From positions 5,146,001-5,210,000 of the forward strand of contig JBLDXI010000009.1 in NCBI GenBank assembly GCA_047495785.1: a stretch of DNA of 64,000 nt. The letters are read 5' to 3'. The notes below the pieces were generated by a model, which was not told where the DNA came from, did no database searches, and saw nothing but the letters and a program-made list of their open reading frames with translations. How positions within the stretch are numbered: position 1 is the first letter of the stretch; each line of letters starts with the position of its first letter. Made by a program: the position numbers and the translations under genes. The DNA is from Lepidodermella squamata. Lineage: Eukaryota > Animalia > Gastrotricha. Positions 44,150-64,000 of this stretch are shown in pieces.

Positions 44150-47100
44150 ATGATACGATTGATTGGCTTCGCTGCCGTAGCGTTCGTAGCATCCTTTGCG
44201 CTCGCTCAAGAGGTTCGAACTGCTGATGAAATTATTCAATGCTATTCAATAAATAAAAACTACAGGTACCGGCTCTTGGTGGCCCAGGATTAAGGCGAAT
44301 TCTCAGCAAGATGGATTCAAAAGTCAAGGCAGATGCGGGTAAAACAATGGTAAGCTTGACAGTATTATCATTCGCCTCATGCTCGCCTAGCCGTGTGACG
44401 AAAAGCAGCAAATCTAATAGCGCATCATTTTATTTCTCGACGCTCAAATTATTTTAATAACGGAAAACGGTGTTTTCATGGGTCGAAGAGTTCTACGCCT
44501 ATGACTACTTATGATTATTTTTTGAAATCATTTTTTTCTGATAAATTTTTCGGCACTCTTGTTGAACTCTTTTGAACCATAAAATTTCGAAAGAGTTCGC
44601 TCGTTTTGTTCGTAGATTTTCTAATTTTTAAGTATTCCTACATGCGCATGGCAAAATTCAGCCATTGGGAAATTGCATAGAGAACAGACTTACCAGAGAT
44701 GAAACTCCTATTGGGAACTTGAAGTTTTAATTTCTTTGCCAATTTTCGTAAATTTTCATAATGGCGGATATTTTTGAAACTCGCGCATACATGTTTACAT
44801 GTAATACAGGGTGGTTCTCCTCGCGCTATACCCACTATCCCTCAACATGGAGTTTCGATTTTTTTTTTATTTTAATCGATGGGGATCGGTTTCAACTTCA
44901 AGAAATCAGCTGGGAAATGAACGGTTTTGAGGCCATAGCGTTTTTCCCGAAGGTCACTTTTTGGGGGTTTAAAAATGGGTATTTTCCGCTTGACCCCACG
45001 GCAATATCTTTGATCGGACTATCGCTTTCTTTCGTGGAAATGATAGGACTGAGTCCATATTACCACCGTGTGAAACGATTTGCCTATACAAAAGCCACCG
45101 TTCAAAAACTATTCATGGGTTTCGGATGCATTTTTTTGGTTTACATGCTTTATTCCTAAACCACCCTGCCGTCATTCCGGATAAACCGTGCTCACGATTT
45201 GTATTAAAAAAATGTGAGGAAATTTCTTAGGCTGCTTTGAAATAATTTAAAAAAAACTTAAAAAAAACAATTTCAGCCTCTGCACTTAGCGATATTCGAT
45301 ATTCAATAACAGAATCCCGAAAAAATACTTCCGAAACTCATGAATAGTTTTTGAACGGTGGCCGAAATTACCCTGTCCAAAAAGGGACTTCGTTACAGTA
45401 CCTAACGCGATGTGTGATAGTTGGCACATGAGTTGAATCAGTGTTCTATTGCGCCAATCTGAAAACAAAAATTCTACTGTTGGCAACCGAAATTGCTAAG
45501 GGGAAAACGGATAAATGACCAGCGTCTCATAGGCTTGGTGATGAGCTAGGAGCCGTTTTTGGGACTGTCACCAAACTGCACTAAAGTGTCATCAAAATCG
45601 ATTTTGCTCGAAGTATCAACTACTATGACCCAACTGAATGCATTTCTGGATAGATCTCATCACGCTGATTAACTTTTTCTATGAGAGCGGCTTCCTAGCT
45701 ATCACCGTTCTTGAGATAATCGTCCAGGTGTGACAAAAGGTAAAGTCACGTGACAACTTGACACTGGAATATCTCAATAACGGTAGATGATAAAAATATG
45801 CGGTTTTCAGATTCTTACTCCCCGAATTTTTCTCGGTTGTAGAGCCCACTCGGAGACTCGTAGTTAGGGGTGTCCGCGGTGTCCGCATTTTAAAGAGCCT
45901 AAAATATCCATATGGACAGTGCATAGAGAACGTAGTGATAGCTAGAATAGCTAGAAAACTGGCCGTATTAGTGCGCGTCCGCATTAAGGGGCTGTCCGCC
46001 TTAACGAGCGCGATGTCCGCATAAACTTTGTCCGTCGCCCTAAAATTGTCCGGACTAGCCCGCTGTTTGCTGGGATTCGGATTATACATTACATTACATC
46101 TTCTTCATTTCGTTTAGAGCAAAAAGACAGAAAAGAAACCTGTACACATAACGAAATAAAATTCACTCCGGTGTACCCAGTATGGCTGAAGGATGATGGT
46201 GTTCCTCCAACCATACTGAGTGTCGGAGGAGGGATTATACAGCTTCTACTTTACTTGTCGCCTATCACCTTGAAATGGAAGTAAACAGGCCTAAATCCGA
46301 GTTATTCAACGTCGCTATCGATATATTAGTGGGAATTTCCTAGAAATTGCTCGTTTCGCTTAAATCCGTAAAAATTAAATGTAACTTAGAATGAATTTTA
46401 AATTATACTAAACCAGTAGTCTGGTTTGGTTCAGCTCTCAGGGGGCAAATCGACCCATCCACTTGTACGATCCCTAAACAATTTTAGGGCCCCCTTGAAT
46501 AATTTGGAGACTGCTCAGGGCTGTGAAAATCGGACACTGGTCCCCGGTAGTACATGAGTTTATTCTGTGATGAAAGTTTAGTGATCTGTTTTAATTTCAG
46601 ATGTCTGAGAATGGCGGAGATGCTGAGATGGAACCAATAGTTTCAGCTGCCGCTACCAACGCGTGGCCTCTTCCATTGGTTTTCTATATCGTCAACGGCA
46701 GTTAGTTGAATGATCGGCTTTATTTTATCGTATCTTATTGCCGTCAATCTTTTCCAGGTAAAACCTTTATCGAGGATTACAATGCAGCACTAGAGTTTTA
46801 CAAGCAAGAGACGTGTTTCGACTACGAGATTTCCGATGTCGTCACTGCCACGTCAATAGATGTTATTCAGGACAGCACGTATGTTTTTTATGTGTTTTAT
46901 TCCTAAATGATGCTTCGAAAGGGTTCAAATATTTGCACCACTAAAAATGAGGTTCCATCACTAAATTAGCGCCCTGGTGCTAGTACTGGTACTTCTCTCA
47001 TTATTCTTTTCTGTGCTTTTGACTGAAACTGACGCCCTTCCTGAATCGAGAATAAAATAATTACCGCGCAAATTTTATATCTTTATTTTTTATTTTATTT

Positions 47101-50100
47101 TTATTTACGAAAAAGTTCAGGCGCACACTGTTATCATTAGTAGGCTTATAGCCGACGCCCTATGACGTTCATCTTTTGTTTGAATATTGTGATGTTGACG
47201 GTATCGGGGAAGGTATCGCGTGGCAGGTCGTTCCATTGATTGACGATCTCTTGCATTCTTCGAAAATCTCATTTTTTATATCTCATTTTATATCTCAACA
47301 TGGATAAACTAGTTTTCTTCGTCGATTTTTCAAAAATTTCCCGAAAGAGCCAACCGCGGCAGAAGAATGGCAGATTTGCCGAAAATCTGCAAAAACGGCT
47401 GTTTTCACCAAATTCTAGAAAATTAACTTTGTGAGCCTGCACGATGTACCTGGGCTCATTCGATAGAATGCGAATTCTATTATTCATCTACTGAAAATGC
47501 TGGAAAAACGCTAAGCTGAAATCGACTGAAGTCATTTGCCGGCTTATTTTAGCCTGATTATTTCAGCTTATTTCGTGCTGTTCTGGGTTGTACGCAAAAA
47601 GATACAGCTTCCGCCACGGAATTTATCGCATTTCTTTATTGTTGTGTTATTTATTTTTCAGCTCGACTTGTTTCATATATCCTGGCAAGAGCGACTTGTA
47701 TCTGGAGTATTTTGACAGCGTACACCCACAGGTCAGCTATCCTATATAATTGAACATGTCACCTTTTATCAACATCGTTCTTCTTTCATGTTGGAAATTT
47801 CCATGATTTTCTGTCTGTGAATGCTACAACAGGGCATTTATCGCGAGTTGGCGAATGTTATCGGCGTGGTAATTATTCCTATCAGCATCTTGATTTAGAT
47901 AATAAATGATAAATGATTCTCTGATTCTCTGAAGCCGTTTGAGCACTCTCGCCCGGATCGGGACCAGTACATTAACGTCTTGAGCAGTAATGGGTAATAT
48001 TATGCTAACGAAAAATGGTGCGCGCAGGTCAATTGTGATTTAAACATAGGTGGCCGACTGATAAACAGCCAGACTTCAACGATCACGGTGTGCCATTCGA
48101 CTATGCCTCGGTCACCATGTCTCATCCTACTATGTTTGGCGGCGTTTTCCAGCCGAAAGACTGGCTATATGTCGGGGCGATGAACGGAGCCCTACCGACT
48201 TTCAATAACATCAAATTTTTAAACATGATGTACGATTGCTTGGGTGAGTTTATTCATCACTAGCACTACTCAAATTAAGAAACACGCCTTATTGAATGTT
48301 TAGCAAAGTGCAATGGCACGGCTCCTGAATGCAAACATGGTGGCTATCGCGATCCGAAAGCTTGCGATCGGTGCAGATGCCCGCCCGGGTTCGGCGGTAA
48401 AACTTGCGAATCGTTGCCGCCATTTGAGGGTGAAACCTGTGGCGGCGTGATCAATCTGCCGTCGTGCATTTCAGTGGCTATAGAATCGCCAAACTATCCG
48501 AACTCTTATCCTATGGGCAGCAGTTGTTCATGGCGCATATACAGCTCTACGGTGATTTATAGTCGGTGGCTATAATATAACGACTTTCACGTATATATTT
48601 TTATTTCAGCCTGGTAGTATGGTATTCGCCTTCGACGGAAAACCAGATTTAACTTCGGGAATAAGTACGTGTAACTACTCCTAAGGTTCTAATTTTGTGA
48701 ACAAACCTCTTCGTTATTATGTCATGTTTTTGAGTGATTGATGCTGAATCTTGTATTTTATGCTGAATTTTAGTGACTGAAGGTGTTTCTACTTACACCG
48801 ACACGTGTTTGGATTACGTTGAATTTCGTAATCCGGAAGATGGAACATTGCCTTATCCCCGATTTTGCTCGTATGGCGTTACTTCTGGTAAAATCTACGA
48901 GACGAACAACAACACAGCGGTTGTTTACTTCAAAGCCAACTCGAAGAGCCCAGGCAAGGGTTTCAGGCTCATAGCAAGATCCAGCTGCCCGACGGACAAC
49001 AAGCAAGAACTTCGGCTGACGGCGAGTGGTTACGACTACGAAGGCAAGGTTGCGGTGACGGCAAACGGCACGAATTGTCTGCCATGGCCGCCCATCACCG
49101 ACTGGGTTGCGCAATTCTATGAGATGCTGAAATATCCAAAGGGGCTTGTAAACGATTCGGCGAACTACCTTCGCAATCCAGAGTCCAAGTCGACTGGTCT
49201 CTACTGCAACACAGCTGATGGGCCGCAGAACGGCACAGATGTACCTGTTACTCCCTATGGTATTTCTTTGGCTTTTACTCTTACAAGAAGTTTTATTCTC
49301 AAGCTGAAATGACCTGATCGTTGAGTCGGTCGAATCCATAACTCATAAATTTTGTGTAGTCCCTGAAGTTGACTTTCGTTAACATTGTCACCGTCGCTGG
49401 TTAGAGAAGTAGAAAAGCAACCCCAATTCGCACTTGGTGTTCAAGAAATAATAAGCTGTTATGAATTGCGTTGCTAGTAATTATCGCGATTAAGCTTTTT
49501 CGAGCTAAAAGCTGAATAATATTAAACGAACACCGTGAAATGTAACGAGGCGAAATCCAGATGGGTATGGCTAACAAATTAGCGTTCGCCTCATTCACGA
49601 AACCAATTTTTTCCGGAGTCGAAACTGCAAGGAAAAAGGAATGACAAGGGAAACATTATTCATCTAATTCTTTATATTTTTCAGTAAACATCGCGAATTT
49701 AACATCGAGCAACTCAACGTCAGGCACGAATTCAACATCACCTTCACCGTCAGAAAATGTCCGCGTCCGATGCGGTTCGATAGCCACTAAGGAATTTGTC
49801 GCCTGCCGTCGCCAGTGCAACAACGCAACTGAATTCACATTCCTAAGCCATGGCACTGTTTTTGAAAGCAGATGCACCACTGCGGTAAATTTTTACATGT
49901 TGTATCATACTGAGTGCTATAAAAATGTTCGCTCTCATGGATTTTATTTAATTTAATAAATTTGTCATATTTATTTGTCATAATTTGTCATAATTATTTT
50001 CAGACCGCCCGAAAGTGTTATTCGCGAAGCACAGGCCTCAGGTGTGATGGCAAATGCGTTCCTAATGTTGAGCTGGAAGTAAGCTTATACACTTATTTTT

Positions 50101-50202
50101 AAATGAAGTCTTCTATGGCCTCTGATCAACCAGGTCACTGTGTACAACAAGTACATCCCGTTCAAGAAAAACATTGAGCTGTGCTTGGGATTGATCAAGT
50201 GA
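44150..50202 (+). CDS. Secreted astacin-like pseudo-metalloprotease A: signal peptide, astacin fold without zinc ligands, EGF, CUB, degenerate kringle, Cys-rich tail
   Basis: Exons 44150-44212, 44266-44349, 46601-46700, 46758-46878, 47662-47731, 47833-47868, 47935-47993, 48050-48243, 48304-48551, 48610-48664, 48774-49259, 49685-49884, 50004-50078 and 50134-50202, all GT-AG and in frame. An extra prodomain exon in 44350-46600 cannot be excluded. Motifs: RELANVIGVPFEHSRPDRD, FDYASVTM, CKHGGYRDPKACDRCRCPPGFGGKTCE, CGG...SPNYPNSYP...CSWRI and GYDYEG...TANGTNCLPW...NYLRNP. Confidence 0.88.
44807..45168. mobile_element. Probable Tc1/mariner-type MITE in intron 2 of pseudo-astacin A
   Basis: TA|CAGGGTGGTT ... 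AACCACCCTG forms a 10-bp TIR. The right-hand TA is not preserved. Confidence 0.5.
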
Positions 50203-52688
50203 GTCGGAAAATGCGCCACTACAAGCTTGAGAAATATACATACTTTCAATGAGCCATAAAATAACAACTATTTTCTGATTAATTATTTTTTTTGGTTTTC
50301 CAAGCCTCAAAAAACAGCCTGTGTGCTCTATGTTGTTCCTGATCAATAGAGTTGACCGCAATCTTCTTTCCTATCTTTATGTTGCTCCTAATGAAATCGT
50401 CTGCTCAATAAATATTCTCTTTTCGCGGTTCGTGAGCATTTTCCCCAGAAGGCTGTTAATTAATTAATTTTATTTATTTATATTTGACTTGCAATTATCG
50501 CACTTGCGATTGTAGCAAACAGTAAAACAGAAAAAGAAAGATAATTTTTCACGTATTACGGCGCCTCACTGACGACACAAGATGTTTATCAATATCAATA
50601 TTCATAAGAAATTTTTTAAATGAATTGAGGCTAGAATTAACATTTTCGATGTAGAAAGTATTCCAAACATTAACAATTCGTCTGTCAATTGAGGTGCTCG
50701 AGTATTATGCCGAGCTCATTGAGTTCAAATCTACAAAGGAATAGTTTGTCCTTTTGCTTCTGCGTCCAATTTAGATTTTTGTCGGCAATAAAATATTCGC
50801 AATATACGCACGGCCAAACAGGCCTTCATGCATTAATTTTTGGTGAATTTCTGATGAATTTTAACTTCAAATTTACCTTTTTCAACATCAATTTACTTTT
50901 TCTTTTTTCTATCATCAAACTCTTTTTTTCGACAGCAAACTTCAGAAATTATTATTTGAAAGAAAAATATACTTTCCTGGTTGTGGGTTTTAAGTGTTAT
51001 GTAAGACCCCGGGTGATACTAGCGGGGTACAGACTCGTACCAAAGCAACAAACGAAGGTGATCATATTAACAATTGATTTTTGACGTGCGATTTTTTGCG
51101 CGTGCAGAAGACACGTGCTGCGCAGGAAAAGTCGCCTTAATGCTCGAAATAGGCAATACTTACTTTTTTCTAGGGTAAAACTACGGATTTTAAAAATTAT
51201 CCAAGCTTGACGAATTACTTTGTCCCACGGCGACCATGACGGCGACAGGACCTGATAGCTGTGACTTGAAATTCCTGGAAATTTTCTTGCTGAGAATGTT
51301 AAAATGCTGAAATTATCGATTCCTGTTGAAGTTTTCCAGCCGCGTTTTAAATAGTTTTGAATCACGAATCACGGCCAGCTTGAAAATGTCGCAAAATTAA
51401 TTACCGTATTTTATCGAACAGTATCCAACCTCAAATTATTGCCCCCTGGAATAATGAATAATAGCCACAAAAATTCATCCAAATATTGGGTCCAACGGTT
51501 AATAATAGCCCACCTCGAATAATAGCCACATTCCAATAACAAGAGGTCTAATATGATCAGCTCATGTAGTAAGAATGGGGGAGATGGCTAGCGTGCCAGA
51601 AGAAAATTGAGACGTATAGAGAAGAGAAAGTGCGACAACGAGGAAGATAACTACAGAGCATTTAAGCTTAATTACAGCGACAAAGAGGAATATATTCAAG
51701 CTAAAACATTTTAATGGGTGATCCTGGCGGGCCAATTTTTCTACCACAGGTAGCTGTTAGGTATGGCTAACGCTAGTTTAAATTTTGTTCTTATCGGATC
51801 GTTCATTGCTGCGTAACAAAAATTGCAAATTTACAATTTTCCTTCGATCACAACGCTCTAGATATAAGACACATTTTATATCCACATTGATCGCAAAATT
51901 CTAAAAAGTTCATTTTATGGTCATACTGAAGAAACCTAAATTATGCTCCATTTTTCACTCGTATGAACTCGCAGACGCGTTGTTATTACGAATCGCCTGT
52001 TGTTAGTTGACAAATGTTTAACGCCGAACTTTTTTCCTCATTCATTATTTATTTTCTTCATGATTTCACCGGACGCTGTAATCGGTCTGTTTTCACGGCC
52101 ATGATAGAGAATCCGTTTCAGACAATTATTACTGCGTATTGGGCCTGAATTTCAGTGAAAAATACGAGAGAACAAAAACAACCCGTACCATGAGACGTAT
52201 TTGTGGACGGATGCTGGACTTGGTTGATTTTTGGCTGAGCCTAGAAAACGCGTGTATGCAAAAATTCAGCCCGCCCTGCCCTGTTGACTTGGACGATAAA
52301 AATGCGCAAATTTTTAATTGAAAAAAAATTAAACATTTTGAAAAAGCACGCCGCGTTCATTAAAGATTTTGAATTTAGCGCCAAAATCAACAAGTTTATT
52401 CGAATTCGACAATAAACAGACGTAGATCTTTTCGCGATGCTTTTCAGGCAACAAATAGGCCTAGTCCAGCGTCCGTCCACATTTAGGTCACTTGGTCGTG
52501 CGCGCGTGTTTGCTGCTTAACAAAAAACAGATGTTTACGTGATTCGCTTGACAATCGCTTACAATCACACGCGCTATTTTTCACCATGCGCCCACTGCGC
52601 CGTACTGTTCGTCCGGTTTTATCGGGTAGAAGCTTGAATGAATTTTACTATAACGCGCTTTCAAGTCATCTATTTAGTTTTTATTTTA

Positions 52689-54399
52689 GGAAGTGGCTAT
52701 CTACACCCCCCAGTGGGTGTCAATAACTGACTATTTACACCCACTGGGTGTCAATAACTTGCTATTTGCACCCACCTGCTGGGTCGCATTAACTTGCTAT
52801 TTACACCCACCAGTTTATAGCTAATCTTCAGCTATTTTCACAGGGTGGCTATGATTTTAAGCTGTCTTTCCAGAGAGACTGTTATCGTTTTTGGTTTTGT
52901 TTGTTATTGCGATAAATTTCGTCCATCTACAAAGAGTCCATGTGATACATGCCTGTAGCAAGAAGTGGTACCTGTTTCATATCAAACATTAGTTCAAAAC
53001 TCCTCAATCATCGTCCGTCTTAACTTAGGTTACGATTTCTTCTCATTGATAATTCTTCATAAATTTACGAACAGCTCTATAGGCACCTGGTTTCCAATTA
53101 TGCGAAATTATTTGTCGCATTACCATATCGTTAGCGTCGTTGAATGATGACTCGGATTTAGGCTTTTTTAGTTTACTTCAGTTTTAAGGTGACAGTTAAA
53201 AGGTGGCGTTTTTCGCTTCGATTTGACGCAGTTTTTACGTCATCTTCAAACTAAAAAATAAACAACCCAAATCCGAGTTATTCAACGACAATAACAATGC
53301 GCAAGCTCGCTAGCGCGTCGGTATTTGTCGCTTCGGTATCGCGACATTTTTCACTCGCGAGTTTTTTCAGCTTCAGGAGGGCGTCAAGGCTTGGCCGTTG
53401 CATATATCGGCCCAACGTTTTGCAATTTTGAAGTTCAAAATCAGGTCTATTCACCATAAAAAGGGGAGTCCGATATGAAGTAGTACAGCCGGAGAAAAGC
53501 TTTGGGTTTGCGCGAGCAGAGTGCGCATTTTGTGAGCTTTTTTTGAAAAGGTCCTGCTTAAACGCTAGCTTAATGAAAACCGCTTCGAATTCATGTTTCA
53601 AGTTTCTAGCGTGAGTTTCCCATCTTTTACTTATGTTCTCTATGACTTCAAGTCTCACGTGATGCGCATCATGTGTAATTTTTCAACGAAAATTCTTATA
53701 ATTCATCTATTTTTCTCTGATAAGGTTTCCGAAACTGCCCTAACCCTGGAATATAGATTTTGATTTACCGATTTCTTATCGAGAAGACGGCTGATCATCC
53801 CTAACGTCTGATCAATGACCCCGCCAATACGTTTTGATCCCTTGCGAATTTTCGGCGGATAAAAGCTGGGTTAGCCGCGCAATATTGATAGTCTCGAAAC
53901 CGCCTCATTTAAAATGTCTTTTCTGCTCCAACAAACTTGTTCGCTTTGCCCACGAGCAATGTTATTTTCTTTGATTCACTGTCGTTAATGCAATGTAGGT
54001 TTTTGTTGACTAATTTCACCGTGGCAGCAATTATAACATCGCGATAATTGGTGTAATAATGTCAAGAACTTAAATCGGAAATTCATGCAAATCTATGATA
54101 CTTGATCTATGATAAATAATGGTCCAAATACTAAGGCTATTTCCATTTCAACATCGCAACACAATTTCTCATGAACATTAATGCCTTATTACCTTCAAAA
54201 CTTAAATTTTTACTGTTTTCTGAGCTAAAACTAAGGTAAAACCAGTGGGTGTAAATAGCAAGTTAACGCGACCCAGCAGGTGGGTGCAAATAGCAAGGAT
54301 TAGACACCCAGTGGGTGTAAATAGCAAGTTATTGACACCCAGTGGGTGTAAATAGTCACTTATTGACACCCACTACGGGGGGTGTTGTTAGCCACGACC
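52689..54399. mobile_element. Non-autonomous Mutator/foldback-like element (1.7 kb) with a 9-bp TSD, 100 bp upstream of the pseudo-astacin B ATG
   Basis: TSD TTTATTTTA lies at 52680-52688 and 54400-54408. Termini are GGAAGTGGCTA / TAGCCACGACC. The ~125-160-bp TIRs are built from ~30-bp units (TGGGTGTCAATAACTTGCTATTTACACCCAC), with one extra unit on the right. No intact transposase inside. Confidence 0.85.
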
Positions 54400-54499
54400 T
54401 TTATTTTAATAACAAATTGATAATTTTGCCTACCCGGGACTAATATTCTCAAAAACCTTGCTTACGTTTTAAGTAAATTTCAGTTTGTTTATTATTATT

Positions 54500-57400
54500 A
54501 TGCGATCAGTTGCCTACTTCGCCGTGGTGCTTGCAGCTCTTGCGATCGCTGAAGAGGTGGGAGACTCGCATTTCATCAATATTGGGCACTTGCTGATTAA
54601 ATTGTGTTACCTATTCAATTATAATAACAGTTGCCGGTTTTTGATCGCGAGAAAATCCATCGAGTTTTAGATTCACGAATAAACTCCAATGAAACAAGGG
54701 TGAGTTCAACAATCTCTCCTATTTTGCTCTATATTCTTTTTAGATATTCTCTACTTCTCTGTTTGCCTTTGATTGCAAACACCCCCTATTTTATGTTATC
54801 CCATTTAGCCCCATCATTGCGTTTTGTCTGCCAGTTATCTATGCGAAATTGTTTGCCGATTTTCATAATTTTAACTGAATTTTCGGGCAATATTAGTTCC
54901 GTTTGCCGGTTGCGCAATCGGGCGATAAATTATTTTCTCTTTTCTAATTAGATTTATAATAGCAATAGCAGGGACCGGCCCTTCGGTCCGGCCATCCAAA
55001 ATAAAAATAGAAAATCCGCAAAGAAAGCAGATAACTTTCTCCTTTCTTTTTTTTTTCTTACGCATTCGAGGAAAAACATATTACTCTAGGCGAAGCTCTC
55101 ATAATATCATAATAAGAAGTTGATTTCTTAAGGTCACATTTTACACCCCGAAAATCACCTGTCACATTTTTCCATTAAAATTGCCGTATAACTCTGAAAC
55201 TTCGCAAAATTACAGCTAATCAATTTTCTATAATTTTTTGAACGGGTTTGACAACAATAAACGTTAATTTGCGATTTCGTTCTCAAAATCCGGAAGGATT
55301 TTAATAGATTTTAATTGCAGTGTCGAGTCCATACAGCATTAGTCCCAAGAAAAAATGTGTTTCTTCATATTGATTATTGTTCGAGGTTAGAACATGGGAC
55401 AGGCTGTAGTATGTCGATCTCTACTCTATTTTTTTTTAAGTCGTTGCCCCTTTATTCTGCCTCGTTTTTCATTTTGTGATCAAATCGTGTATTTCAGAGG
55501 CCTGACGATGGTTATGTGTTCGATGATACTACGCCTCTAAACGCTACGTCTTTCAGCGCAATTCAACTGCTCAACGATCACAACATGTTGGCCGAAAGTC
55601 GCAAGGCCGGAGATTCTGATTCCGCCCCGATAGTCGCAGCTGCCGCACCGAACACTTGGAACTTACCACTGAGTATCTTTTTCTCGACTTTTGGTTAGCT
55701 GGATGAGGCTTTCTTAGATTTTATCTTATTGATTTGAGTACCTTTCAGATCAAACCTTTATCGATGAGTACACAGCGGGTCTAGAATTTTACAAGCGGGA
55801 GACGTGTTTCGACTACATAATTTCGGATCGCACTAACGTTAGCTCGATAGTAGCAGTAAAGCCGTATTCGCAGTATGCTTTTTAGTTGAATTAATTTGAA
55901 TTCATTTTAGTCAAATTAGAATCTTTTCTATCCACCATTTTGATTGTTCTATATTTTCTAAAATTAGTTTCAGCTCTTTGTCCCCTTGGGCAGATTTTAC
56001 CTGTCAACCGGCCCTCCTCCTTAGCGTCAGGTGAAGGGGTTTCTAAGCACATTTACGGATCCGCGGTGGTTTCCTCCGGCCACTAAAATGCCGTGATTTG
56101 CTAGTTTTCCATAACAATTATTTGCTCGCACACTTTTGGCCGGTTCAAAAATTAACGCGAGAATCGCACTAATGCCGCTGCGAAACAAAATAACCGTCGA
56201 CTTGGCAAATTCAAAATTATTGACGCATTTGACCCTAGCGGAAAATTAGAAAAAATTGGAAAAATAACAAAAATTATCAATTGGAAGCGCTGACCAATGG
56301 ATGCAGTCAGGGTGGCCAAAAAATCCTGCAGAGCGAGAATTCGATGGGCATCATTTTAATGAGGAGTTTCAAGAAATTGAGGACTTCCATTGGAAAAAGA
56401 ATGCTTGAAATTCTTCAACTTCTTGAAGCTCCTCATTAAATTGATGCGCATCGAATTCCCGCTCTGCAAAATGTTTTGGCCACCGTGTAATTCAGCTGCA
56501 CTCGATGATGAAATCAAAAATATGCTTGTTATCACCATTTTCAATCCTGAACGCAGCTTTAGGAAGACTTTGAATATCAATAAATGTTTGATAAAATCGA
56601 CATTTTGTTCGCTATTCAAGGAGGAGGTTGTCATATTACTGTCATTACAGTATGGCAGTTTACGTTCATTCACGCTGCCTTCGTGGCTTTATTCGTTTCT
56701 TTTCTACAGTAATATCACATTGCAATAAACTTAGTTTTTTTGCAACACGCAAACACTCCGCCATCCACAAAATGATTAATAAGGTCACTCCATCAAAATG
56801 ATTAATGGAAATAGACAACAAATAGGATAGTATACTTTCCACCTGTAAATTGAAAATTAAAAGTAAATTTGTGACCATCATCGATGTGAAAGCAGAAAAT
56901 TGATAATGGATAATTTTTTTATATTATGAATAATGCCGAGGCATGACATTTTTGAATTTAAATAGATCAAATTGCTTGCAAATCGATTTCTTCACAAATT
57001 TTTCAAGAATATTAACAATTGAAGTAAAACGCGGGATTTAGCTGAGCAAAAAGATAGAGCTGGAATTAAGGTTTTTTTTAAAGAGCCAACAGTTATTTTT
57101 CAAAACTGCGATCATTTTGCTGTAAAAGCCACCCAAACACAGCGTGGAGAGGGTGTTCATGCGCTCTGGATGAAAATTATCCTCTAAGCCGGAAGTTGAT
57201 CACTAAAATCAGTCCGTTATGATAGTCATAATGCATAGATGCAAGTCCGGCTTATGATAGCCCGGCTTATTGCAACCATTTGCATGTAAAACGCCATTCT
57301 GCGGCACAAGCCAAGCAAAATGGTCCGGCTAATGATCGTCCGGCTTAACGCAAAACTACTGTAATTTCACGCGGATTAAATATAAAAAATATCGGAAAAA

Positions 57401-60400
57401 CTGACCATTCTACATCGCTACAAGAACACGACGTGATCATGATTATACATCTGTTACGAAAAATGACAGAAAACAATAGGGTAAACCGCCCTAATTCTGC
57501 ATAAAAAATGTCGTCCGACTTTGACGCGATCGTTCTCGGCCGCCTTGAGGTATTTTGAAATTTCCTTTTAGGGGTAGGTGGGTCCGACCCTCAATTGCGT
57601 AACCCCAAAAGGAGAAATTCGGGCGACGCACCGTTTGCGCGCAGCAGCTGTCGCACGCGAGTGAGCGCCGGTTATGCAGCATTAGGATCATTGTCGCAAT
57701 TTTGCATAAAATTTTGATTTTCTGGCCAAAATTGCATACTCGTTCAATTTTAATATTTTTTTCTCGGCCTTCTCATGAATTGGGTAAAATTTCATGCTGA
57801 ATACGCTGGTCACATCAGATTTCATTTTGTTCTAATTTTTATTGTGGATTTTGAAGTCGCAAGAATAGCTTGCGAGCTTCGCCATAAAAATGGCGAATCC
57901 TCTGCTGTTTGCTGGTTGAGCCTCCATCTAATTTTTCCTTATTCAAAAAATCTTAACGTCCAAAACGTCGATGTGAAAAATATATCTAAACCAAACAGCA
58001 TTGCTTGACTAACCAGTTGAAGAGCTCTTGGAGATGGCGTTTACTGGAGTTGGTATATTGGCTGACTCAGTTAGAAGGAGTAAGCATTTCCGGGGAAAAA
58101 CAATCCACCAAATCCGGTCGAATGACTGGCGCCGTTCCAATACCTCGTGGTCGAAAGGCTGTGTTCATATTTCAGTAATGTTCTGACCAGCTGATGTTCA
58201 TGGCTAAATGTGAAAATGTCAAACGGCGCCCCTGACCAGGCGCCGTTTGAGGCAAGTCGCGTTCGAAGTTGCGAGACAGGAGAAGGTGAAACACCAGTTC
58301 AAGGATGGCACAGTGGACCAATAAATGGCTCCGGGGCTTTAGGTACTTGCCTGATGATGCTGTTGGGGCCCAAGCCCGGTTTAGGCCTGTACCCGTTTGG
58401 GTAACGGGTAACGGCGCTTTGCCACGCCGCGCTCGAGTGTCCGTATAACGTGCCCGTTACGACTTCGGCTATACTAATGTGGACCTCCTGAACCTGGCCC
58501 TAGTTTGGACCGCACCTGTTTTCATCGGTTTCATACCGGTGCCCGAGCACGGCGGAGTTAAGCGCGCGCACAATACGCGGGCCCGCCTAAAGTTCTCTCC
58601 GCCGCTCTCGGGTTGTCACCTGCGCTTGTCCACTGATGCGATATTTGTTCAAATTCATTTGATTTAGCATGAACGTTGCATGCGGGTAGTATTTGAAGCG
58701 ACCCGAGCGCGGACAAACTAAAAACAGTTTCCCGCATGCCAGAGCGCGAACGTGCACAACTCGGACTTCAAAATCCACAATAAAAATTAGAACAACATGA
58801 AATCTGATGTGACCAGCGTATTCAGCGTGAGAAGGCCGAGAAAAAAATATTAAAATTGAACGAGTATGCAATTTTGGCCAGAAAATCAAAATTTTATGCA
58901 AAATTGCGACAATGATCCTAATGCTGCATAACCGGCGCTCACTCGCGTGCGACAGCTGCTGCGCGCAAACGGTGCGTCGCCCGAATTTCTCCTTTTGGGG
59001 TTACGCAATTGAGGGTCGGACCCACCTACCCCTAAAAGGAAATTTCAAAATACCTCAAGGCGGCCGAGAACGATCGCGTCAAAGTCGGACGACATTTTTA
59101 TGCAGAATTAGGGCGGTTTACCCTAATTCGCTTTCGTTACCAACTACTGAAATTGATTTCCGATTGTTTAGATCGTCCAGCTCGGAAATTCCTGGTCCAA
59201 GATACGAATATTGGTTCCTCGCGGACGGCGTAAACCCACAGGTCAGTTTGTCAAAATATTCATTTTTTCCCGCATCTTATTGGGCACAGCAGCAGGATAG
59301 TAGTGACAGGGTACCTCTGGCACTGGGCTGCCGAGAAGGATAATGTTAGATCTATCTATGATCTACTGGGAAGGGCCGAACCGAGTCTGCAATTTTCGCC
59401 GTCCGTGCCTAGAAAAGTATCGTCCAATGTCCAAAATACGAGATGAATCGGGAAAACGTATTTTTACATCTTTGCAAATCTCGCAACTAATAGAGAATAC
59501 GCGGTTAAAGTTTCAAGCCGCCGGTTCGGTTAATCGAAAATTGCTGACCAACAAACTGGGTAAATCAAAGACTTTATTTTTAGATTGTTCAAATTGAACG
59601 TTTTTGCATAACAATAGCTCCTAAACCGTAGCCATAGCTAGAGGGTTTTTTTTATTCGTAACACTTTGAACAGTATTCTGTATTCTGTATCTGTATTCTG
59701 TATTCTGTAACGTTGTCTTATTTCGACCAAAAACCTGTTTTTCAGGGTTAATTTTGTGAGATGAGCGAATTCTTTCACGTACTTTGCGCCAAAAGATGCC
59801 CCTTGAAAAACTGCATATGCTAGTGTTAATCACGGTAAAAGTATACTTTCTGCGAAATATACCTGCACAAGTATTCACGGGAAACTGACTCGGCTAATTT
59901 CGGACACAACTAGGGTAATGTCGGACAGCTCAGTGTGAAATTAAGATTAGGGCCAAAGTTCACATTAAAGCGAGATAAATTTGTGAGCAGATTTAAAAAG
60001 AAAAAATAAATTGCATGTTGAGGGATTTGAACCCCCGATAGCGAATTGGTGCTCTCAAAGAGGTTCAGTGCTCTTCTCACTAAAATATTAAAGTTAAAAA
60101 CTGTCAGGGTCGATTGAATTCGCTGTAGTTAGAGCAGGCTGTCCGAAATAAGCCGGGGTATATCGGTTTTTCTGGCGGAATTTCAGGCAAAATGCCTGGT
60201 ATAAATGTGTTCCAAACATGCCAACCTTACTGAATTCGATGCGCCCTTTCTTTTGCGCTTCTATCCGGCAAAATTTACTGCAATTTTTTACCTCAGCGCT
60301 CACCTGCGAAGAAGTGCAATCATTATTCGTGAACAAAGCCGTTTCTCATATTTCAGGTGTCATTTGAAAGACAAGTCTCTGGGCTATCTCCTGAATTTTG

Positions 60401-63400
60401 AACGGTATTTCTATCTACCAGGGTTTTGGAGAAACTCACGCTAGCCAAAAATGTCCGAAATTACCCGATGTCCGAAGAATGACTGCGTTACAGTATGCTG
60501 TATTTTGTGTATTGTCGTTCGGAAACAGCACTTTCTACAGAAAATGCAATAATTTTCTACGCGTTCGTAAATTCGCTGTTTTTATGCAGTATAAAGTGTA
60601 TTTTCCCAGAGGGGTTTTTGTATTCGCAACAGAAAATACACTTACAGCTACAGTTTTTTGCATTCGAAAATTCGCTACAGAAATACTGAGGGTTATTTTG
60701 GAAGTATCTTTATGGTAAAGTCGACTCTATCGATAAGGCCAACTTCATCCGATAAAGTCGTCATTAGCTCAAGTCGACTTTATCGGATGAAGTTGGCTTT
60801 ATCTGGCAAAAAAGCTAAAAGCTTGGCGCCAGTTTCAAATTGCTCAGCATTTGTCGTGACCTACTTTTAACCAGCTTCTGTTATTGATATGATTCGTTAT
60901 CCAATTAGGCCAGCAAGTGTTTTGAGGTCAAAATGCTCGATTTCGGACAAAAATCGGTCGTTAAATTTGACTTGAGTCGACTTCGTAAACTAAGTCACAT
61001 TTGTGAATGATTTACTATTTCTGCATTTTGCACAGATGCAACAATTTTATGTAATGGGTGCAATAAGGTAAATTATCGCACATTACATAAAGCAGTTAGG
61101 GGGAGGATTTTTCGCGGTTTGTCGGTTTCGCTGTTCTGCGCAATCTCTCCTTGACGTCCTACCTAATTATCTCCGAAGGTATGATGGCAATGAAAATTCT
61201 GTGAACGGATTATGATCCGTGAAAGGCTTCCAAAGGGGGGTTTCACAAAGAACCGACTTACCCGATTTATTAGGTATTGAAATCTTAAGAGGATTAAAAC
61301 CGCCTAAGTAAAAAGCTGAATATGGTTAACCGGAAGCGTAATTGATTTTGGGATATATTTTTTATTATCATGAATTACGACGTCTAGATTTTGGATCTAG
61401 GGTAAAATTCATTGTTGATAAAAGCTTCCTTTCGACGCCGTCACACTGCACTTTTTGCGGTAGTTTCACTCCGCGTTCAATTCGCTAAATATTTGGCTTT
61501 CTTGCTGAAATGTCCAGTCAGCCGGCCGGAATTTAGTCGACCCATACCCAACCAGAAACCGGTCAACTTACAACAGGGTAAACCCGACCTTTTTCCACCG
61601 CTGACCATTGGCGATATTTCTCGGCGGGACCGGGCGTCAAGATCCAAAGACAAGATCCATGTCATAAGATGATCGCTCGTGAGACGGTTACTAACAAAAC
61701 TTGGCGGCGTTGCGTGCGGGTGAAGGGGTGAAGGGGGTCGGTGACGACAAAACCGTGAAACAAAGCAGCGTGGTAGGCGAAAAACCAGTGTTTCCCCCCA
61801 GTATATGGACTGAGATTGCAGCTGAAACTGTATATAGAGAACAGTCGGACATCATAAAAGTGCTAGACGTGACACACTGGCGGCACTCCACACGCTGGGC
61901 GACAAACAAGCAAACATGTTCACGATAATATAAACGGCTCACATTCGAATGTTTTGTTTTTAAAACAGGGCATTTATCGCGAGCTGTCGATTGTTGTCGG
62001 AGTGGTAATTGTTCCTATAACAGTATTTTTATTTAATTTACGGTAAAAAATATTTTCCAAAGCCGCTGGAACACACACGCCCAGATCGTGACCAGTACAT
62101 AAACGTCTTGAGGAATTCCCGGTAACGTACTAACAAAAAGTCAATGTAGTCACTTGTGATTTCAACGTAGGTGGTCGACTTACAAACAGCCGAACTTCAA
62201 CGATTACGGTGTGCCATTCGACTATGCCTCGGTCACCATGTCTCATCCTACTATTGGTGGCGGCTTATTCCAGCCGAAAGACTGGCGATATGTCGGGGCG
62301 ATGAACGCAGCCCTACCAACTTTCAATAACATCAAGTTTGTTAACATGATTTACGATTGCTTATGTGAGGATGTGCATCACGACTCGAATGTTGAAATAA
62401 GCCATATTGAACTTTCAGCGAAATGCAATGGCACCGGTCCTGATTGCAAATATGGTGGCTATCGCGATCCGAAAGCTTGCGATCGGTGCAAATGCCCGCC
62501 CGGGTTCGGCGGTAAAACCTGCGAATCGTTGCCGCCATTTGAGGGTGAAACTTGTGGGGGCGTGATCAATCTGCCGTCGTGCATTTCAGTGGCTATAGAA
62601 TCGCCCAACTATCCGAACTCTTATCCAATGGGCAGCAGCTGTTCATGGCGCATAAAAAGCTCAACGGTGATTTATAGTCGGTGGCTAATACAACGATTTT
62701 TACATGTATATTTTCATTTCAGCCTGGTATGGTATTCGCCTTCGACGGAAAACCAGATTTAACTTCGGGAATAAGTACGTGTAACGTGCAATTCAAGGTT
62801 TATATTTTTCGGACGGTATTTTGAACCTCTTTGTTATTATGTCATGTTCTTAAGTGATTGGTACTGAATCGTTTATTTTATGCTGAATTTTAGTGAATGA
62901 AGGTCTTTCTACTTACACCGACACGTGTTTGGATTACGTTGAATTTCGTAATCCGGAAGATGGAACGTTGCCGTATCCTCGATTTTGCTCGTACGGCGTC
63001 ACTTCTGGTAAAATCTATGAAACTAACGGCACCACCGCTGTTGTCCACTTCAAAGCGAACTCCAAGAAACCGGGCAAGGGTTTTAGGCTAATAGCAAGAT
63101 CTATCTGCCCGACGGACAACAAGCAAGAACTTCGACTGACGGCGAGTGGTTACGACTACGAAGGCATTGCTGCAAATACAGCCAACGGCACGAATTGTCT
63201 GCCATGGCCGCCCATCACCGACTGGGTTGCGCAATTCTATGAGATGCTCAAATATCCAAGGGGGCTTGTTAACGATTCGGCAAACTACCTTCGCAATCCA
63301 GAGTCCAAGTCGACTGGTCTCTACTGCATCACTGGTGAAGGACCGAAGGATGGAGCGAACGTACCGATGACTACCATAAGTATATTTAATGTTTTTTAGA

Positions 63401-64000
63401 AATGTTAATGCTATCTTCGTAACTTTGCTTCACAACAGATTTGCCACTCAAGCGCTGTGCAGCTAAAAGTAATCTAGAGTTCATGGGATGCCGCGTGAAC
63501 TGCTCAGCTGGAGAGTCAGAAATAGCGAGCCCTGAACCTTTTTACGGTGATTATTGCAACAAAGGGGTAATTAGTCAATATTGAATTTCACGTTCTTAAA
63601 AGACGCTTGATTGCTATTTTTATTTCCAGTCAGCCAAAAAGTGTTCCATTGGAAACACCGGAACATTTCGATGCACCAATGGTGGTTCAGGATGCAATCA
63701 AGCTGGCGAAAGCACGGTGTGATGGAAATGTGGTTTACATGTAATTTCGGACAACTTTTGCTGTTTCAGGTGCGCCCTTTGTATTCAGGATACAAATATT
63801 TCGGCCGTAACTGGCTCGACTGCAATCACGTGGACGGAATGGTTTGTCACTACACTATCCTTATCGCCAATGCTAATTGAGCTGAACCCTTTTAGAAATA
63901 TTATCAGTGCTACAAAGTCAAAACGAACGGTTTTGTTGATTGCCGCCGTTCTAGCTGTCGTGAAGGCGAGGCAAGTTTACCCAATACATTTCTGCGAACG
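54500..64000 (+). CDS. Secreted astacin-like pseudo-metalloprotease B (paralog of A); continues past the window end
   Basis: Exons 54500-54556, 54631-54699, 55498-55693, 55749-55872, 59172-59241, 61969-62004, 62063-62121, 62171-62364, 62419-62666, 62723-62774, 62894-63379, 63439-63566, 63630-63716, 63770-63841 and 63896-~63970. Intron positions and phases match A through the core. The zinc-site equivalent reads RELSIVVGVPLEHTRPDRD. Confidence 0.88.
56308..56487. mobile_element. Palindromic ~180-bp MITE, family copy 2 (intronic)
   Basis: CAGGGTGGCCAAAAAATCCTGCAGAGCG...CGCTCTGCAAAATGTTTTGGCCACCGTG|TA, colinear with 43107-43286. Confidence 0.85.
57478..59124. mobile_element. Young non-autonomous DNA transposon with ~360-380-bp near-perfect TIRs, inside intron 4 of pseudo-astacin B
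   Basis: 57478-57858 is the reverse complement of 58764-59124, differing by a ~19-bp insertion, a 1-bp indel and a few substitutions. Ends read AAT|AGGGTAAACC...GGTTTACCCT|AAT (3-bp AAT TSD, PIF/Harbinger-like), or alternatively TA|GGG...CCC|TA. This explains the mirror ORFs 57491-57691 and 58912-59343. Confidence 0.88.
59673..59709. repeat. Short (GTATTCT)n-type microsatellite, about 5 units
   Basis: Sequence gtattctgtattctgtatctgtattctgtattctgta. Confidence 0.7.
59888..60158. mobile_element. Probable MITE carrying a degenerate tRNA-like segment
   Basis: Imperfect TIRs (ctCGGCTAATTTCGGACA / TGTCCGAAATAAGCCGgg) flank an internal minus-strand B-box GGTTCAAATCCC near 60022-60033. Confidence 0.45.
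60732..60803. repeat. 72-nt hairpin (29-bp stem, 14-nt loop) in an intron of pseudo-astacin B
   Basis: GATAAGGCCAACTTCATCCGATAAAGTCG-tcattagctcaagt-CGACTTTATCGGATGAAGTTGGCTTTATC, with one G-U pair. Confidence 0.75.

What the first reader, a model, noticed from the sequence alone, without database searches (positions are those of the whole stretch)
44150..64000. Two secreted zinc-less pseudo-astacins with EGF-CUB-kringle-Cys-rich architecture
Seen only after splicing across a 36-nt mini-exon. The astacin signature HExxHxxGxxHExxRxDRD reads RELANVIGVPFEHSRPDRD in A (47833-47993) and RELSIVVGVPLEHTRPDRD in B (61969-62121). All three zinc-ligand His are replaced (R/N/F and R/I/L), and the Met-turn SxMHY becomes SVTMS. 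The structural Glu, Gly, RxDRD and outer Cys pair remain, and 14 or more exons stay in frame in both copies. Established: these His are essential for metzincin catalysis, and astacin-EGF-CUB occurs in nematode NAS and sea-urchin BP10/SpAN proteins. Inference: a duplicated family of non-proteolytic secreted binders (decoy/substrate trap, ligand, or adhesive/toxin component). I do not recognise this kringle-bearing architecture.
Basis: partly seen in the sequence, partly recalled or inferred. Interest (0 to 1): 0.85.

Follow-up and report, generated by a model that had tools for sequence, protein, structure and literature searches.

The report
Secreted dead-astacin gene family
Two neighbouring genes in this poorly sampled invertebrate encode secreted proteins built on a zinc-protease (astacin) scaffold that has lost every zinc-binding residue. 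They belong to an expressed, conserved family of about 24 such "dead proteases", so they probably act by binding rather than cutting.

Summary

cDNA contigs identical to the window give GT..AG junctions.
- **The 36-nt mini-exon** is supported indirectly, by contig-length arithmetic and read depth.
- **Gene B** (54500 to past the window end) stays in frame through 10 modelled exons; an 11th begins at 63439. One exon (59172-59241) is tentative.
- **Homology:** the domain matches active astacins over its whole length (hhalign 97.5%).
- **Active site:** the zinc ligands read R/N/F in A and R/I/L in B. SxMHY reads SVTMSHP. No HExxH occurs in any frame of either gene.
- **Origin:** A and B belong to one clade of about 24 genes in this genome. 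It derives from active astacin-EGF-CUB-kringle genes that have the same mini-exon.
- **Selection:** dN/dS is below 1 in every domain (astacin-like 0.47, CUB 0.10, kringle 0.27).
- **Kringle:** it is degenerate, with one of three disulfides left.

Loss of catalysis, secretion and selective maintenance are supported. A binding or decoy role is inference only.

I found no astacin pseudoenzyme family described in the library searched. First readers of this scan noted similar dead-astacin families elsewhere in this genome. This is a new variant of a known kind, of moderate interest.

The parts
44150..44212 (+). Gene A exon 1: start codon and signal peptide (MIRLIGFAAVAFVASFALA|QE)
   Evidence: cDNA joint 44212/44266 with GT..AG. 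The hydrophobic N-terminus with an AXA site was judged by inspection.
44266..44349 (+). Gene A exon 2: pro-segment
   Evidence: cDNA joints on both sides. The pro-region evolves near neutrally between A and B (omega about 1).
46601..46700 (+). Gene A exon 3: end of the pro-segment and start of the astacin-like domain (AAATNAWPLPL)
   Evidence: cDNA contig piece 46600-46700 with no mismatches, and joints.
46758..46878 (+). Gene A exon 4: astacin N-subdomain with the outer Cys (ETCFDY)
   Evidence: cDNA contig piece and joints. Aligns to the active L033 sequence.
47662..47731 (+). Gene A exon 5: segment aligning to the GCWSYVG segment of the active relative L033 (STCFIYPGK...). This is the fastest-evolving part of the domain.
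   Evidence: Joint 46878/47662. Depth fits 70 nt. Paralogs share only a PG motif here. Omega is 0.72 between A and B.
47833..47868 (+). Gene A exon 6: 36-nt mini-exon for the former active-site helix, GIYRELANVIGV (H1 to R, Glu kept, H2 to N)
   Evidence: AG/GT borders. Contig-length arithmetic and depth. A homologous mini-exon occurs in 10 of the fetched paralogs besides A and B. A 42-nt version reading ..AAHE.GHALG. occurs in active paralogs.
47935..47993 (+). Gene A exon 7: PFEHSRPDRDQYINV (H3 to F; family-specific Glu and RxDRD kept)
   Evidence: AG/GT borders and frame. Aligns to HEHMRPDRD of L033.
48050..48243 (+). Gene A exon 8: astacin C-subdomain with the altered Met-turn (DYASVTMSHP) and the outer Cys (YDC)
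   Evidence: cDNA pieces 48104-48242 and joint 48243/48304. Strongly conserved across the 21 paralogous copies found in the fetched loci; 14 columns are invariant in the 15-sequence alignment A2.
48304..48551 (+). Gene A exon 9: EGF-like module and N-terminal part of CUB
   Evidence: cDNA piece 48303-48550. Pfam CUB E 4.5e-4 and weak EGF matches. Collinear with the EGF-CUB of L033.
48610..48664 (+). Gene A exon 10: middle of CUB
   Evidence: cDNA joints 48551/48610 and 48664/48774.
48774..49259 (+). Gene A exon 11: C-terminal part of CUB plus a kringle-like domain that keeps only the C2-C4 disulfide
   Evidence: cDNA pieces. Pfam Kringle E 7.8e-8, 33.0 bits against a cut-off of 34.3. Alignments. 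The family profile hits solved kringles at 1e-16 to 1e-21.
49685..49884 (+). Gene A exon 12: linker rich in Asn, Ser and Thr, holding three of the protein's ten N-glycosylation sequons (N510, N515, N521), and the first part of the Cys-rich tail
   Evidence: cDNA joint 49259/49685. Sequons listed. The module occurs at 12 loci of the genome. No Pfam or Atlas match.
50004..50078 (+). Gene A exon 13: Cys-rich tail
   Evidence: cDNA joint 49884/50004 and a loose end at 50080 that continues into exon 14.
50134..50202 (+). Gene A exon 14: C-terminus (..NIELCLGLIK) and stop codon
   Evidence: The cDNA loose-end sequence matches 50136 onward. Conserved up to the stop codon in paralogs.
54500..54556 (+). 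Gene B exon 1: signal peptide
   Evidence: ATG, hydrophobic N-terminus and GT donor. No RNA evidence was obtained for B.
55498..55693 (+). Gene B exon 2 (equivalent to A exons 2 and 3)
   Evidence: AG/GT borders, in frame; tblastn match to A.
55749..55872 (+). Gene B exon 3 (equivalent to A exon 4)
   Evidence: The donor aligns with A's donor and has the same phase.
57504..59099 (.). Insertion with perfect 272-nt terminal inverted repeats inside the intron of gene B that precedes its 59172-59241 exon (likely a young DNA transposon)
   Evidence: the repeat finder: arms 57504-57775 and 58828-59099, 100% complementary.
59172..59241 (+). Gene B tentative exon (equivalent to A exon 5)
   Evidence: Only 3 stop-free AG|70 nt|GT candidates of the right phase exist in 6.1 kb. 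This one matches A at 8 of 23 residues; the others match at 0-1. It restores the reading frame.
61969..62004 (+). Gene B mini-exon GIYRELSIVVGV
   Evidence: AG/GT borders, 36 nt.
62063..62121 (+). Gene B exon PLEHTRPDRDQYINV
   Evidence: AG/GT borders, 59 nt.
62171..62364 (+). Gene B astacin C-subdomain exon
   Evidence: In frame, 90% nucleotide identity to A.
62419..62666 (+). Gene B EGF and N-terminal CUB exon
62723..62774 (+). Gene B middle CUB exon (3 nt shorter than in A)
62894..63379 (+). Gene B C-terminal CUB and kringle-like exon
   Evidence: Pfam Kringle E 5.9e-7. In frame.
63439..64000 (+). Gene B Cys-rich tail, with at least two RC..F..CR modules. It runs past the window end and its 3' end is not resolved.
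   Evidence: tblastn and frame inspection on the extended sequence L036.

Best explanation
A and B are members of a lineage-specific clade of about 24 genes for secreted, probably glycosylated pseudo-astacins.

The A protein runs as follows:
- signal peptide
- a short, fast-evolving pro-segment
- an astacin-fold domain without a metal site
- an EGF-like module
- CUB
- a degenerate kringle
- a linker bearing N-glycosylation sites
- a Cys-rich tail

The clade arose from active astacin-EGF-CUB-kringle protease genes with the same exon structure.

**Shown here.** All three zinc-ligand histidines and the tyrosine ligand are replaced. The general-base Glu is not conserved across the clade. The metzincin mechanism is therefore not available. 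Scaffold elements persist: the Glu that normally pairs with the mature N-terminus, RxDRD, the Met-turn Met and the outer disulfide.

**Inferred.** The proteins act by binding. CUB and kringle, the most constrained parts, would serve as targeting modules. The remodelled cleft would serve as an accessory surface. The proteins would most likely act as competitors, decoys or adaptors in the extracellular pathways served by the many active astacins of this genome.
For: **Gene models.** Splicing and expression of A come from identical cDNA contigs and from the arithmetic. B is in frame.

**Homology to astacin catalytic domains over the whole domain.**
- blastp of the domain alone against an active relative: 8e-13.
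- Profile of 10 active astacins: 36 bits, E 5e-9.
- hhalign: 97.5%, E 5e-12.
- Collinear alignment through EGF and CUB: 6e-35.

**Dead site.** The ligands read R/N/F in A and R/I/L in B, and the Met-turn reads SVTMSHP. No HExxH or HDxxH occurs in any + frame of either gene.

**Family.**
- 26 matches to the dead C-subdomain, and about 26 CUB-kringle exons at 51% identity or more.
- One clade with 100/100 support, apart from the active genes.
- None of the paralogous mini-exons found (in 10 fetched paralogs besides A and B) encodes HExxH.

**Ancestry.** Active paralogs use a 42-nt mini-exon reading AAHE.GHALG. with the same 3' border. An active relative has the same astacin-EGF-CUB/kringle layout.

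**Selection.**
- Omega A-B: astacin-like 0.47, CUB 0.10, kringle 0.27, pro-region about 1.
- Omega A-L013: CUB 0.01, kringle 0.11.
- Exons are 87-94% identical where most introns are 63-76% (intron 9: 86%).
Against: - No biochemical test was possible, so loss of activity is inferred from sequence.
- The astacin-like domain could not be folded. A spliced sequence has no reference in these tools.
- Single exons give no Pfam astacin hit, and the C-subdomain profile finds no solved astacin. Homology therefore rests on full-domain comparisons.
- RNA evidence covers A only. The joints flanking the mini-exon were not listed and are inferred indirectly.
- B's exon 5 is tentative.
- Omega for the astacin-like domain (0.47; exon 5 0.72; exon 8 0.64 at low divergence) shows weaker constraint than for CUB and kringle. 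The dead domain may matter less than the modules behind it.
- No binding partner is known.
Confidence: 0.75

Rival explanations
1. A and B are decaying duplicates (pseudogenes or transcribed relics) of active astacin genes and have no function.
For: - The catalytic residues are lost.
- The kringle has lost two of three disulfides.
- B carries a transposon-like insertion and two long introns.
- The pro-region and exon 5 evolve almost neutrally.
- Two paralogs (L018, L028) may be disrupted after PKD.
Against: - A has a 14-exon open frame with canonical splice sites and is expressed.
- B is in frame.
- Omega is below 1 in all folded domains.
- The C-subdomain has 14 invariant columns across 15 paralogs that are otherwise 40-80% identical.
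- The dead state is shared by a clade of about 24 genes, so it is old.
Confidence: 0.06
2. The domain still catalyses hydrolysis, or binds a metal, through a rebuilt site. Candidates are the invariant His of EH.R.DRD, the invariant His of the HP that replaces the Tyr ligand, and, in A and B, the retained Glu.
For: His in ..EH.. and His in ..M.HP are nearly invariant in the clade. A, B and L013 keep Glu at the general-base position.
Against: - Three of four protein zinc ligands are replaced by R/K/L, N/I/Q and others, and F/L/Y/M.
- The Glu is S, V, R or N in most paralogs.
- I know of no metzincin that works without the His triad (established knowledge; see PMC9848320 on the motif).
Confidence: 0.07
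3. The dead motif is an annotation artefact, and the real transcript uses another exon carrying HExxH.
For: The two junctions around the 36-nt exon were not printed among the listed joints.
Against: - No HExxH or HDxxH exists in any + frame from 44150 to 50205 or from 54500 to 64000.
- The contig length fits the model to the base, and depth agrees.
- The same mini-exon is found in 10 fetched paralogs besides A and B.
Confidence: 0.01

Closest known systems
Active astacin metalloproteases (MEROPS M12A, Pfam PF01400) with EGF-CUB tails.
   Same: - Signal peptide, pro-segment and catalytic-domain scaffold.
- Family-specific Glu, RxDRD, Met-turn Met and outer disulfide.
- The EGF motif C.GGY.DP..C..C.CP.GFGG..C.
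- CUB, then kringle.
- The same mini-exon for the active-site helix.
   Different: - No HExxHxxGxxH, and no Tyr ligand.
- The inner disulfide is lost.
- The mini-exon is 6 nt shorter.
- The kringle has lost C1-C6 in the whole clade, and also C3-C5 in the A/B subgroup.
Astacin-CLEC-kringle proteins of Dimorphilus gyrociliatus (A0A7I8VBN4) and Mytilus coruscus (A0A6J8CIB2), listed in the supplement of PMC9848320
   Same: An astacin domain combined with a kringle in protostome animals.
   Different: Those were selected for an intact zinc motif and carry a C-type lectin instead of EGF-CUB. I did not compare the sequences.
ADAM pseudoproteases (ADAM2, 7, 11, 18, 22, 23, 29, 32; C. elegans unc-71), reviewed in PMC11266112
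   Same: Metzincin-clan domains with substituted zinc ligands and general base but a retained Met-turn. They act through protein-protein binding.
   Different: - A different family (M12B): membrane proteins with disintegrin domains.
- That review lists no astacin pseudoenzyme.
- Here the proteins are secreted and expanded to about 24 copies in one genome.
Plasminogen-related growth factors HGF and MSP (from my own knowledge, not tested here)
   Same: Kringle modules joined to a catalytically dead protease domain. The protein works as a secreted ligand.
   Different: The dead domain there is a serine protease and the kringles are intact and N-terminal. There is no homology of the protease part. 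This is an analogy only.

Membership tests
Astacin (M12A / PF01400) | Catalytic-domain homology over the whole roughly 190-residue domain | tested here: met
   hhalign of A+B against 10 active astacins: 97.5%, E 5e-12, 149 columns running to the terminal YDC. Profile search: 36 bits, E 5e-9. blastp of the domain alone: 8e-13. Collinear alignment: 6e-35.
Astacin (M12A / PF01400) | Zinc-binding motif HExxHxxGxxH | tested here: not met
   A reads RELANVIGVPF and B reads RELSIVVGVPL. No HExxH in any frame.
Astacin (M12A / PF01400) | Met-turn SxMHY with the tyrosine zinc ligand | tested here: not met
   The sequence is SVTMSHP. Met is kept. His stands where Tyr aligns, and this His is invariant in the clade.
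Astacin (M12A / PF01400) | Family-specific Glu after the third ligand, and RxDRD | tested here: met
   A has FEHSRPDRD and B has LEHTRPDRD. The EH.R.DR pattern is present in 13 of the 14 copies in which this exon was found.
Astacin (M12A / PF01400) | Pfam gathering score on the protein | tested here: inconclusive
   Single exons give no PF01400 hit at E up to 1. The spliced protein could not be submitted because it has no reference.
Astacin (M12A / PF01400) | Zinc-dependent proteolysis | not testable with these tools
   Needs recombinant protein.
Kringle (PF00051) | Sequence-profile match over the domain | tested here: met
   Pfam E 7.8e-8, 33.0 bits (cut-off 34.3), profile positions 4-67 of 79. 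phmmer finds multi-kringle proteins at up to 7.5e-39. The clade profile A3 hits solved single kringles at 1e-16 to 2.5e-21 over positions 15-96 of 97. A3 includes four true kringles.
Kringle (PF00051) | Three conserved disulfides (C1-C6, C2-C4, C3-C5) | tested here: not met
   A and B keep only C2 and C4. C1 and C6 are lost in the whole clade. C3 and C5 are lost in two subgroups.
Kringle (PF00051) | Kringle fold | tested here: inconclusive
   The AlphaFold2 model has mean pLDDT 58.8. The top Foldseek rows are kringles, but E is 0.4 or worse and TM is 0.2-0.3.
CUB (PF00431) | Profile match and the four-Cys pattern | tested here: inconclusive
   The domain is split over three exons. The N-terminal piece scores 21.0 bits against a cut-off of 21.4, E 4.5e-4. 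Exon 11 aligns to the CUB-kringle proteins P0114 and P0133. Cysteines 288/317 and 355/375 are present.
Pseudoenzyme (maintained inactive homologue) | Catalytic residues lost, but the gene is intact, expressed and under purifying selection | tested here: met

The most novel reading that the evidence does not exclude
The former substrate cleft has become a variable recognition surface. The exon 5 segment, which aligns to the GCWSYVG segment of the active relative, differs almost completely between paralogs. The C-subdomain and the CUB-kringle stalk stay fixed. On this reading, the roughly 24 genes form a secreted recognition or decoy repertoire that tunes, or competes with, the more than 100 active astacins of this animal.
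Probability: 0.15. Interest if true: 0.7.

Novelty: new variant of a known kind. Interest (0 to 1): 0.45.

Why it matters
Pseudoproteases are well studied among ADAMs, carboxypeptidases and serine proteases. The 2024 review of metallopeptidase pseudoenzymes lists none from the astacin family. The 2023 astacin review excluded sequences without an intact zinc motif.

Here a whole clade of about 24 expressed, selectively maintained dead astacins sits beside its active progenitors, which have the same gene structure. That offers a natural system for asking:
- what an astacin scaffold does once catalysis is gone
- how protease families spawn non-catalytic binders

The practical value is limited. 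The organism is obscure, and no function or partner is known.

Tried and rejected
- **Pfam on single exons:** no astacin hit.
- **Exhaustive phmmer with the CUB-kringle exon:** only kringle proteins at about 30% identity, plus three exon-like ORFs of a relative. No close homologue.
- **Profile of the dead C-subdomain (A2):**
  - nothing in 5.8 billion proteins, though the search is limited by word matching and length
  - nothing in JGI metagenomes
  - no solved astacin found
- **Kringle-like region:** the AlphaFold2 model has low confidence, and Foldseek found no significant match.
- **C-terminal Cys-rich module:** no Pfam or Atlas lead.
- **Alternative HExxH exon:** none.
- **Species identification:** failed.
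  - An intron-less astacin found only remote hits.
  - A conserved PIX-like gene found named homologues at only 29-38% identity, in molluscs and insects.
  - The animal is a poorly sampled protostome.
- **Positive selection on exon 5:** not shown. Omega is 0.72 on 24 codons, which fits relaxed constraint.
- **Folding the spliced astacin-like domain:** left out.
- **RNA evidence for gene B:** not obtained.
Full report
**What is in the sequence**

The window has eukaryotic structure, with short GT..AG introns of about 55 nt and about 40% GC. It is G000:C9:5146001-5210000 of a 121-Mb, 151-contig genome.

- In A, a 36-nt exon (47833-47868, GIYRELANVIGV) is followed by a 59-nt exon (47935-47993, PFEHSRPDRDQYINV...).
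- In B, the equivalents are 61969-62004 (GIYRELSIVVGV) and 62063-62121 (PLEHTRPDRD...).
- All four have AG/GT borders.

**Transcript evidence for gene A**

One public run (X1) holds 21% of the words of 44150-50149. Its contigs match the window without a mismatch.
- One contig starts with the reverse complement of a SMART-type cDNA adapter.
- The contigs skip ten GT..AG intervals that the DNA run X2 does not skip. X1 therefore behaves as cDNA of the same organism.

The listed joints fix these exons: 44150-44212, 44266-44349, 46601-46700, 46758-46878, 47662-..., ...-48243, 48304-48551, 48610-48664, 48774-49259, 49685-49884 and 50004-....

The junctions around the mini-exon, and the one into exon 8, were not among the joints printed. 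They are still supported.
- A 617-nt contig equals the 22-nt adapter, plus exons 1-7 as modelled, plus 84 nt of exon 8.
- That contig ends at 48133. This is 30 nt (k-1) past the start of the next unitig at 48104.
- Depth in bin 47750-47949 corresponds to about 51-55 covered bases, which fits the mini-exon plus the start of the next exon.

The last two exons (50004-50078 and 50134-50202, including the stop codon) follow from a loose end that continues into 50136. They are conserved up to the stop codon in paralogs.

Gene A therefore has 14 exons and encodes 619 aa.

**Gene B**

B was modelled by homology. It has one exon fewer at the 5' end.

Its intron after 55872 holds a 1.6-kb insertion with perfect 272-nt inverted repeats.

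The counterpart of A's exon 5 was not found by tblastn.
- Only three stop-free AG|70 nt|GT intervals of the right phase exist in the 6.1 kb between 55875 and 61968.
- One of them (59172-59241) matches A at 8 of 23 residues, including the PG and the terminal PQ. The other two match at 0 and 1.
- With this exon, B reads open for 507 aa through the kringle exon.

B's Cys-rich tail differs from A's and runs past the window end. I obtained no RNA evidence for B.

**Is it an astacin, and is it dead?**

Single exons give no Pfam astacin hit. Whole-domain comparisons do establish homology.

A metagenomic relative (L033) encodes, in one ORF, an active astacin (AAHEVGHALGLFHEHMRPDRD, SVMHY) followed by the same EGF and N-terminal CUB. 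A kringle ORF comes next.
- A aligns to it collinearly over 316 columns (6e-35).
- The domain alone gives blastp 8e-13.
- A profile of 10 active astacins gives 36 bits (E 5e-9 for 20,000 sequences).
- hhalign gives 97.5% (E 5e-12) up to the terminal YDC.

In these alignments:
- the three zinc histidines are R/N/F in A and R/I/L in B
- the Gly, the Glu after the third ligand, RPDRD and the outer cysteines (C102, C241) are kept
- SVMHY reads SVTMSHP, so Met is kept and His stands at the Tyr position
- of the inner cysteine pair, A keeps one Cys and B keeps none

No HExxH or HDxxH exists in any + frame of either gene, so no alternative exon can restore the motif.

**A family, not a pair**

The CUB-kringle exon has 145 matches in the genome. 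About 26 of them are at 51-89% identity and the rest are at 46% or less. The dead C-subdomain exon has 26 matches at about 24 loci, on contigs C9, C16, C43, C4, C10, C48, C32 and C31.

In 20 fetched loci:
- the same exon structure recurs
- ten of these paralogs, besides A and B, have the 36-nt mini-exon (G-I-[YFH]-[RKL]-x-L-...-G-[VIL]), never with HExxH
- the next exon reads [FLYM]-E-H-x-R-x-D-R-D
- the C-subdomain is strongly conserved (G[VI]PFDY[AG]S.TM.HP...PKDWRY.GAMN...FNN.K.LN..YDC), with 14 invariant columns in 15 sequences
- the Glu at the general-base position is kept only in A, B and L013

A maximum-likelihood tree of the CUB-kringle exon puts all 24 family rows on one side of a branch with 100/100 support. 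Every sampled active gene lies on the other side. The tree is rooted at the midpoint, for drawing only.

Active paralogs (L037, L039) encode the active-site helix on a 42-nt mini-exon, (P/D)G.AAHE.GHALG(M/L), with the same 3' border. The dead clade therefore descends from active astacin-EGF-CUB-kringle genes. The mini-exon is ancestral, not an oddity of A and B.

**A and B are not independent witnesses**

Region 47825-49228 of A is 85% identical to 61961-63348 of B, introns included. Exons 3-4 are only about 60-70% identical, and the C-terminal tails differ. This pattern fits gene conversion over the stretch from the mini-exon to the kringle.

**Selection**

| Segment | Comparison | Omega |
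|---|---|---|
| Pro-region | A vs B | about 1.0 |
| Exons 3-4 | A vs B | 0.35 |
| Exon 5 (24 codons) | A vs B | 0.72 |
| Exons 6-7 | A vs B | 0.27 |
| Exon 8 (low divergence) | A vs B | 0.64 |
| Whole astacin-like domain | A vs B | 0.47 |
| EGF + N-terminal CUB | A vs B | 0.16 |
| C-terminal CUB | A vs B | 0.10 |
| Kringle | A vs B | 0.27 |
| CUB | A vs L013 / L014 | 0.01 / 0.06 |
| Kringle | A vs L013 / L014 | 0.11 / 0.15 |
| Tail | A vs L013 / L014 | 0.28 / 0.21 |

Exons in the A/B tract are 87-94% identical where most introns are 63-76% and intron 9 is 86%.

The genes are maintained. The stalk modules are the most constrained part. The dead domain is constrained, but less so.

**The other modules**

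*Kringle.*
- The assignment is sound at sequence level: Pfam E 7.8e-8 (just under the cut-off), and the clade profile hits solved kringles at 1e-16 to 1e-21.
- The domain is degenerate. The whole clade has lost C1 and C6. The A/B/L013/L014 and L015-L019 subgroups have also lost C3 and C5.
- A model of it was of low confidence, and the fold search was not significant.

*Tail.*
- A has ten N-glycosylation sequons. Three of them sit in a linker rich in Ser, Thr and Asn.
- The Cys-rich tail matches nothing in Pfam or the Atlas, and occurs at 12 loci of the genome.

**How it most likely works**

*Shown.* A is an expressed, spliced gene for a secretion-type protein. Its astacin-homologous domain lacks all protein zinc ligands. 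The dead state is shared by a conserved clade.

*From established knowledge.* The metzincin mechanism needs the His triad and the Glu (see PMC9848320 on the motif). These proteins should therefore not cut peptide bonds that way.

*Inferred.* The proteins act by binding. CUB and kringle would act as the conserved targeting part. The altered cleft would act as an accessory surface, possibly a variable one. The retained Glu after the third ligand suggests the N-terminus is still buried after removal of the pro-segment, but I could not test this.

The specific role (competitor, decoy or adaptor for the active astacins) is a hypothesis.

**Comparison with what is known**

- Astacin plus kringle is recorded for Dimorphilus and Mytilus, as CD-CLEC-KRING with an intact motif (PMC9848320 supplement).
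- That review selected only sequences with an intact zinc motif.
- The 2024 pseudopeptidase review covers ADAMs within M12 and lists no astacin pseudoenzyme.
- Four further full-text searches found no described dead-astacin family. The library is not complete.
- From my own memory, not checked here, MEROPS lists non-peptidase homologues in M12A.

First readers of this scan noted several other dead-astacin families in the same genome, including one that overlaps the end of this window. I confirmed the expansion independently.

**Verdict**

This is a new variant of a known kind, namely a pseudoprotease clade within the astacin family. Interest is moderate.

Noticed in passing
window 15266-41098: A tandem array of at least five genes for alpha/beta-hydrolases of the arylacetamide-deacetylase / hormone-sensitive-lipase type (HGGGW motif), each with a long low-complexity N-terminal region. 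Another note of the scan covers one copy.
   Followed up: no
window 12247-14400: A 717-aa single-exon ORF for a PIX / ARHGEF7-like RhoGEF (SH3, DH, PH). The best named homologues are only 29-38% identical (molluscs, insects). An unnamed ENA metagenome protein is 59% identical. The animal therefore belongs to a poorly sampled protostome lineage.
   Followed up: partly
window 57504-59099: An element with perfect 272-nt terminal inverted repeats, 1052 nt apart, sits inside an intron of gene B and looks like a very young DNA transposon. Identical ORF fragments are seen on both strands.
   Followed up: partly
L036 about 5100-7800 (G000:C9:5213100-5215800, just past the window): A third, more distant astacin-EGF-CUB-kringle gene that is also dead (..LGMTSEARRPDRDLY.., and LPYDYASIFSPY in place of the Met-turn). 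On the tree it falls outside the 24-gene clade, so catalysis was probably lost more than once.
   Followed up: partly
L002 1429-2577 and L003 964-2466 (G000:C32 and C17): Single ORFs holding two astacin domains in tandem. The first is active (HEILHSLGLHHEH / HEVLHILGLFHEH). The second is dead (NFWLLAAVGLVPEVRRPDRD / FLMLTAGVPYEHR).
   Followed up: no
L037 (G000:C7:89001-99000): Three tandem active astacin genes, each followed by a canonical kringle. Two keep the 42-nt active-site mini-exon. The middle copy has lost the intron after it.
   Followed up: partly
window 44350-46600 (intron 2 of gene A): This 2.25-kb intron contains very high-copy repeats. Summed contig depth in the DNA run reaches about 35,000 at 46150-46349, against about 50 for unique sequence.
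   Followed up: no
P0001, P0003 (ENA metagenome proteins): Proteins with 7-8 kringles fused to a rhodopsin-type 7TM receptor domain appeared among the best kringle hits. The architecture is unusual.
   Followed up: no
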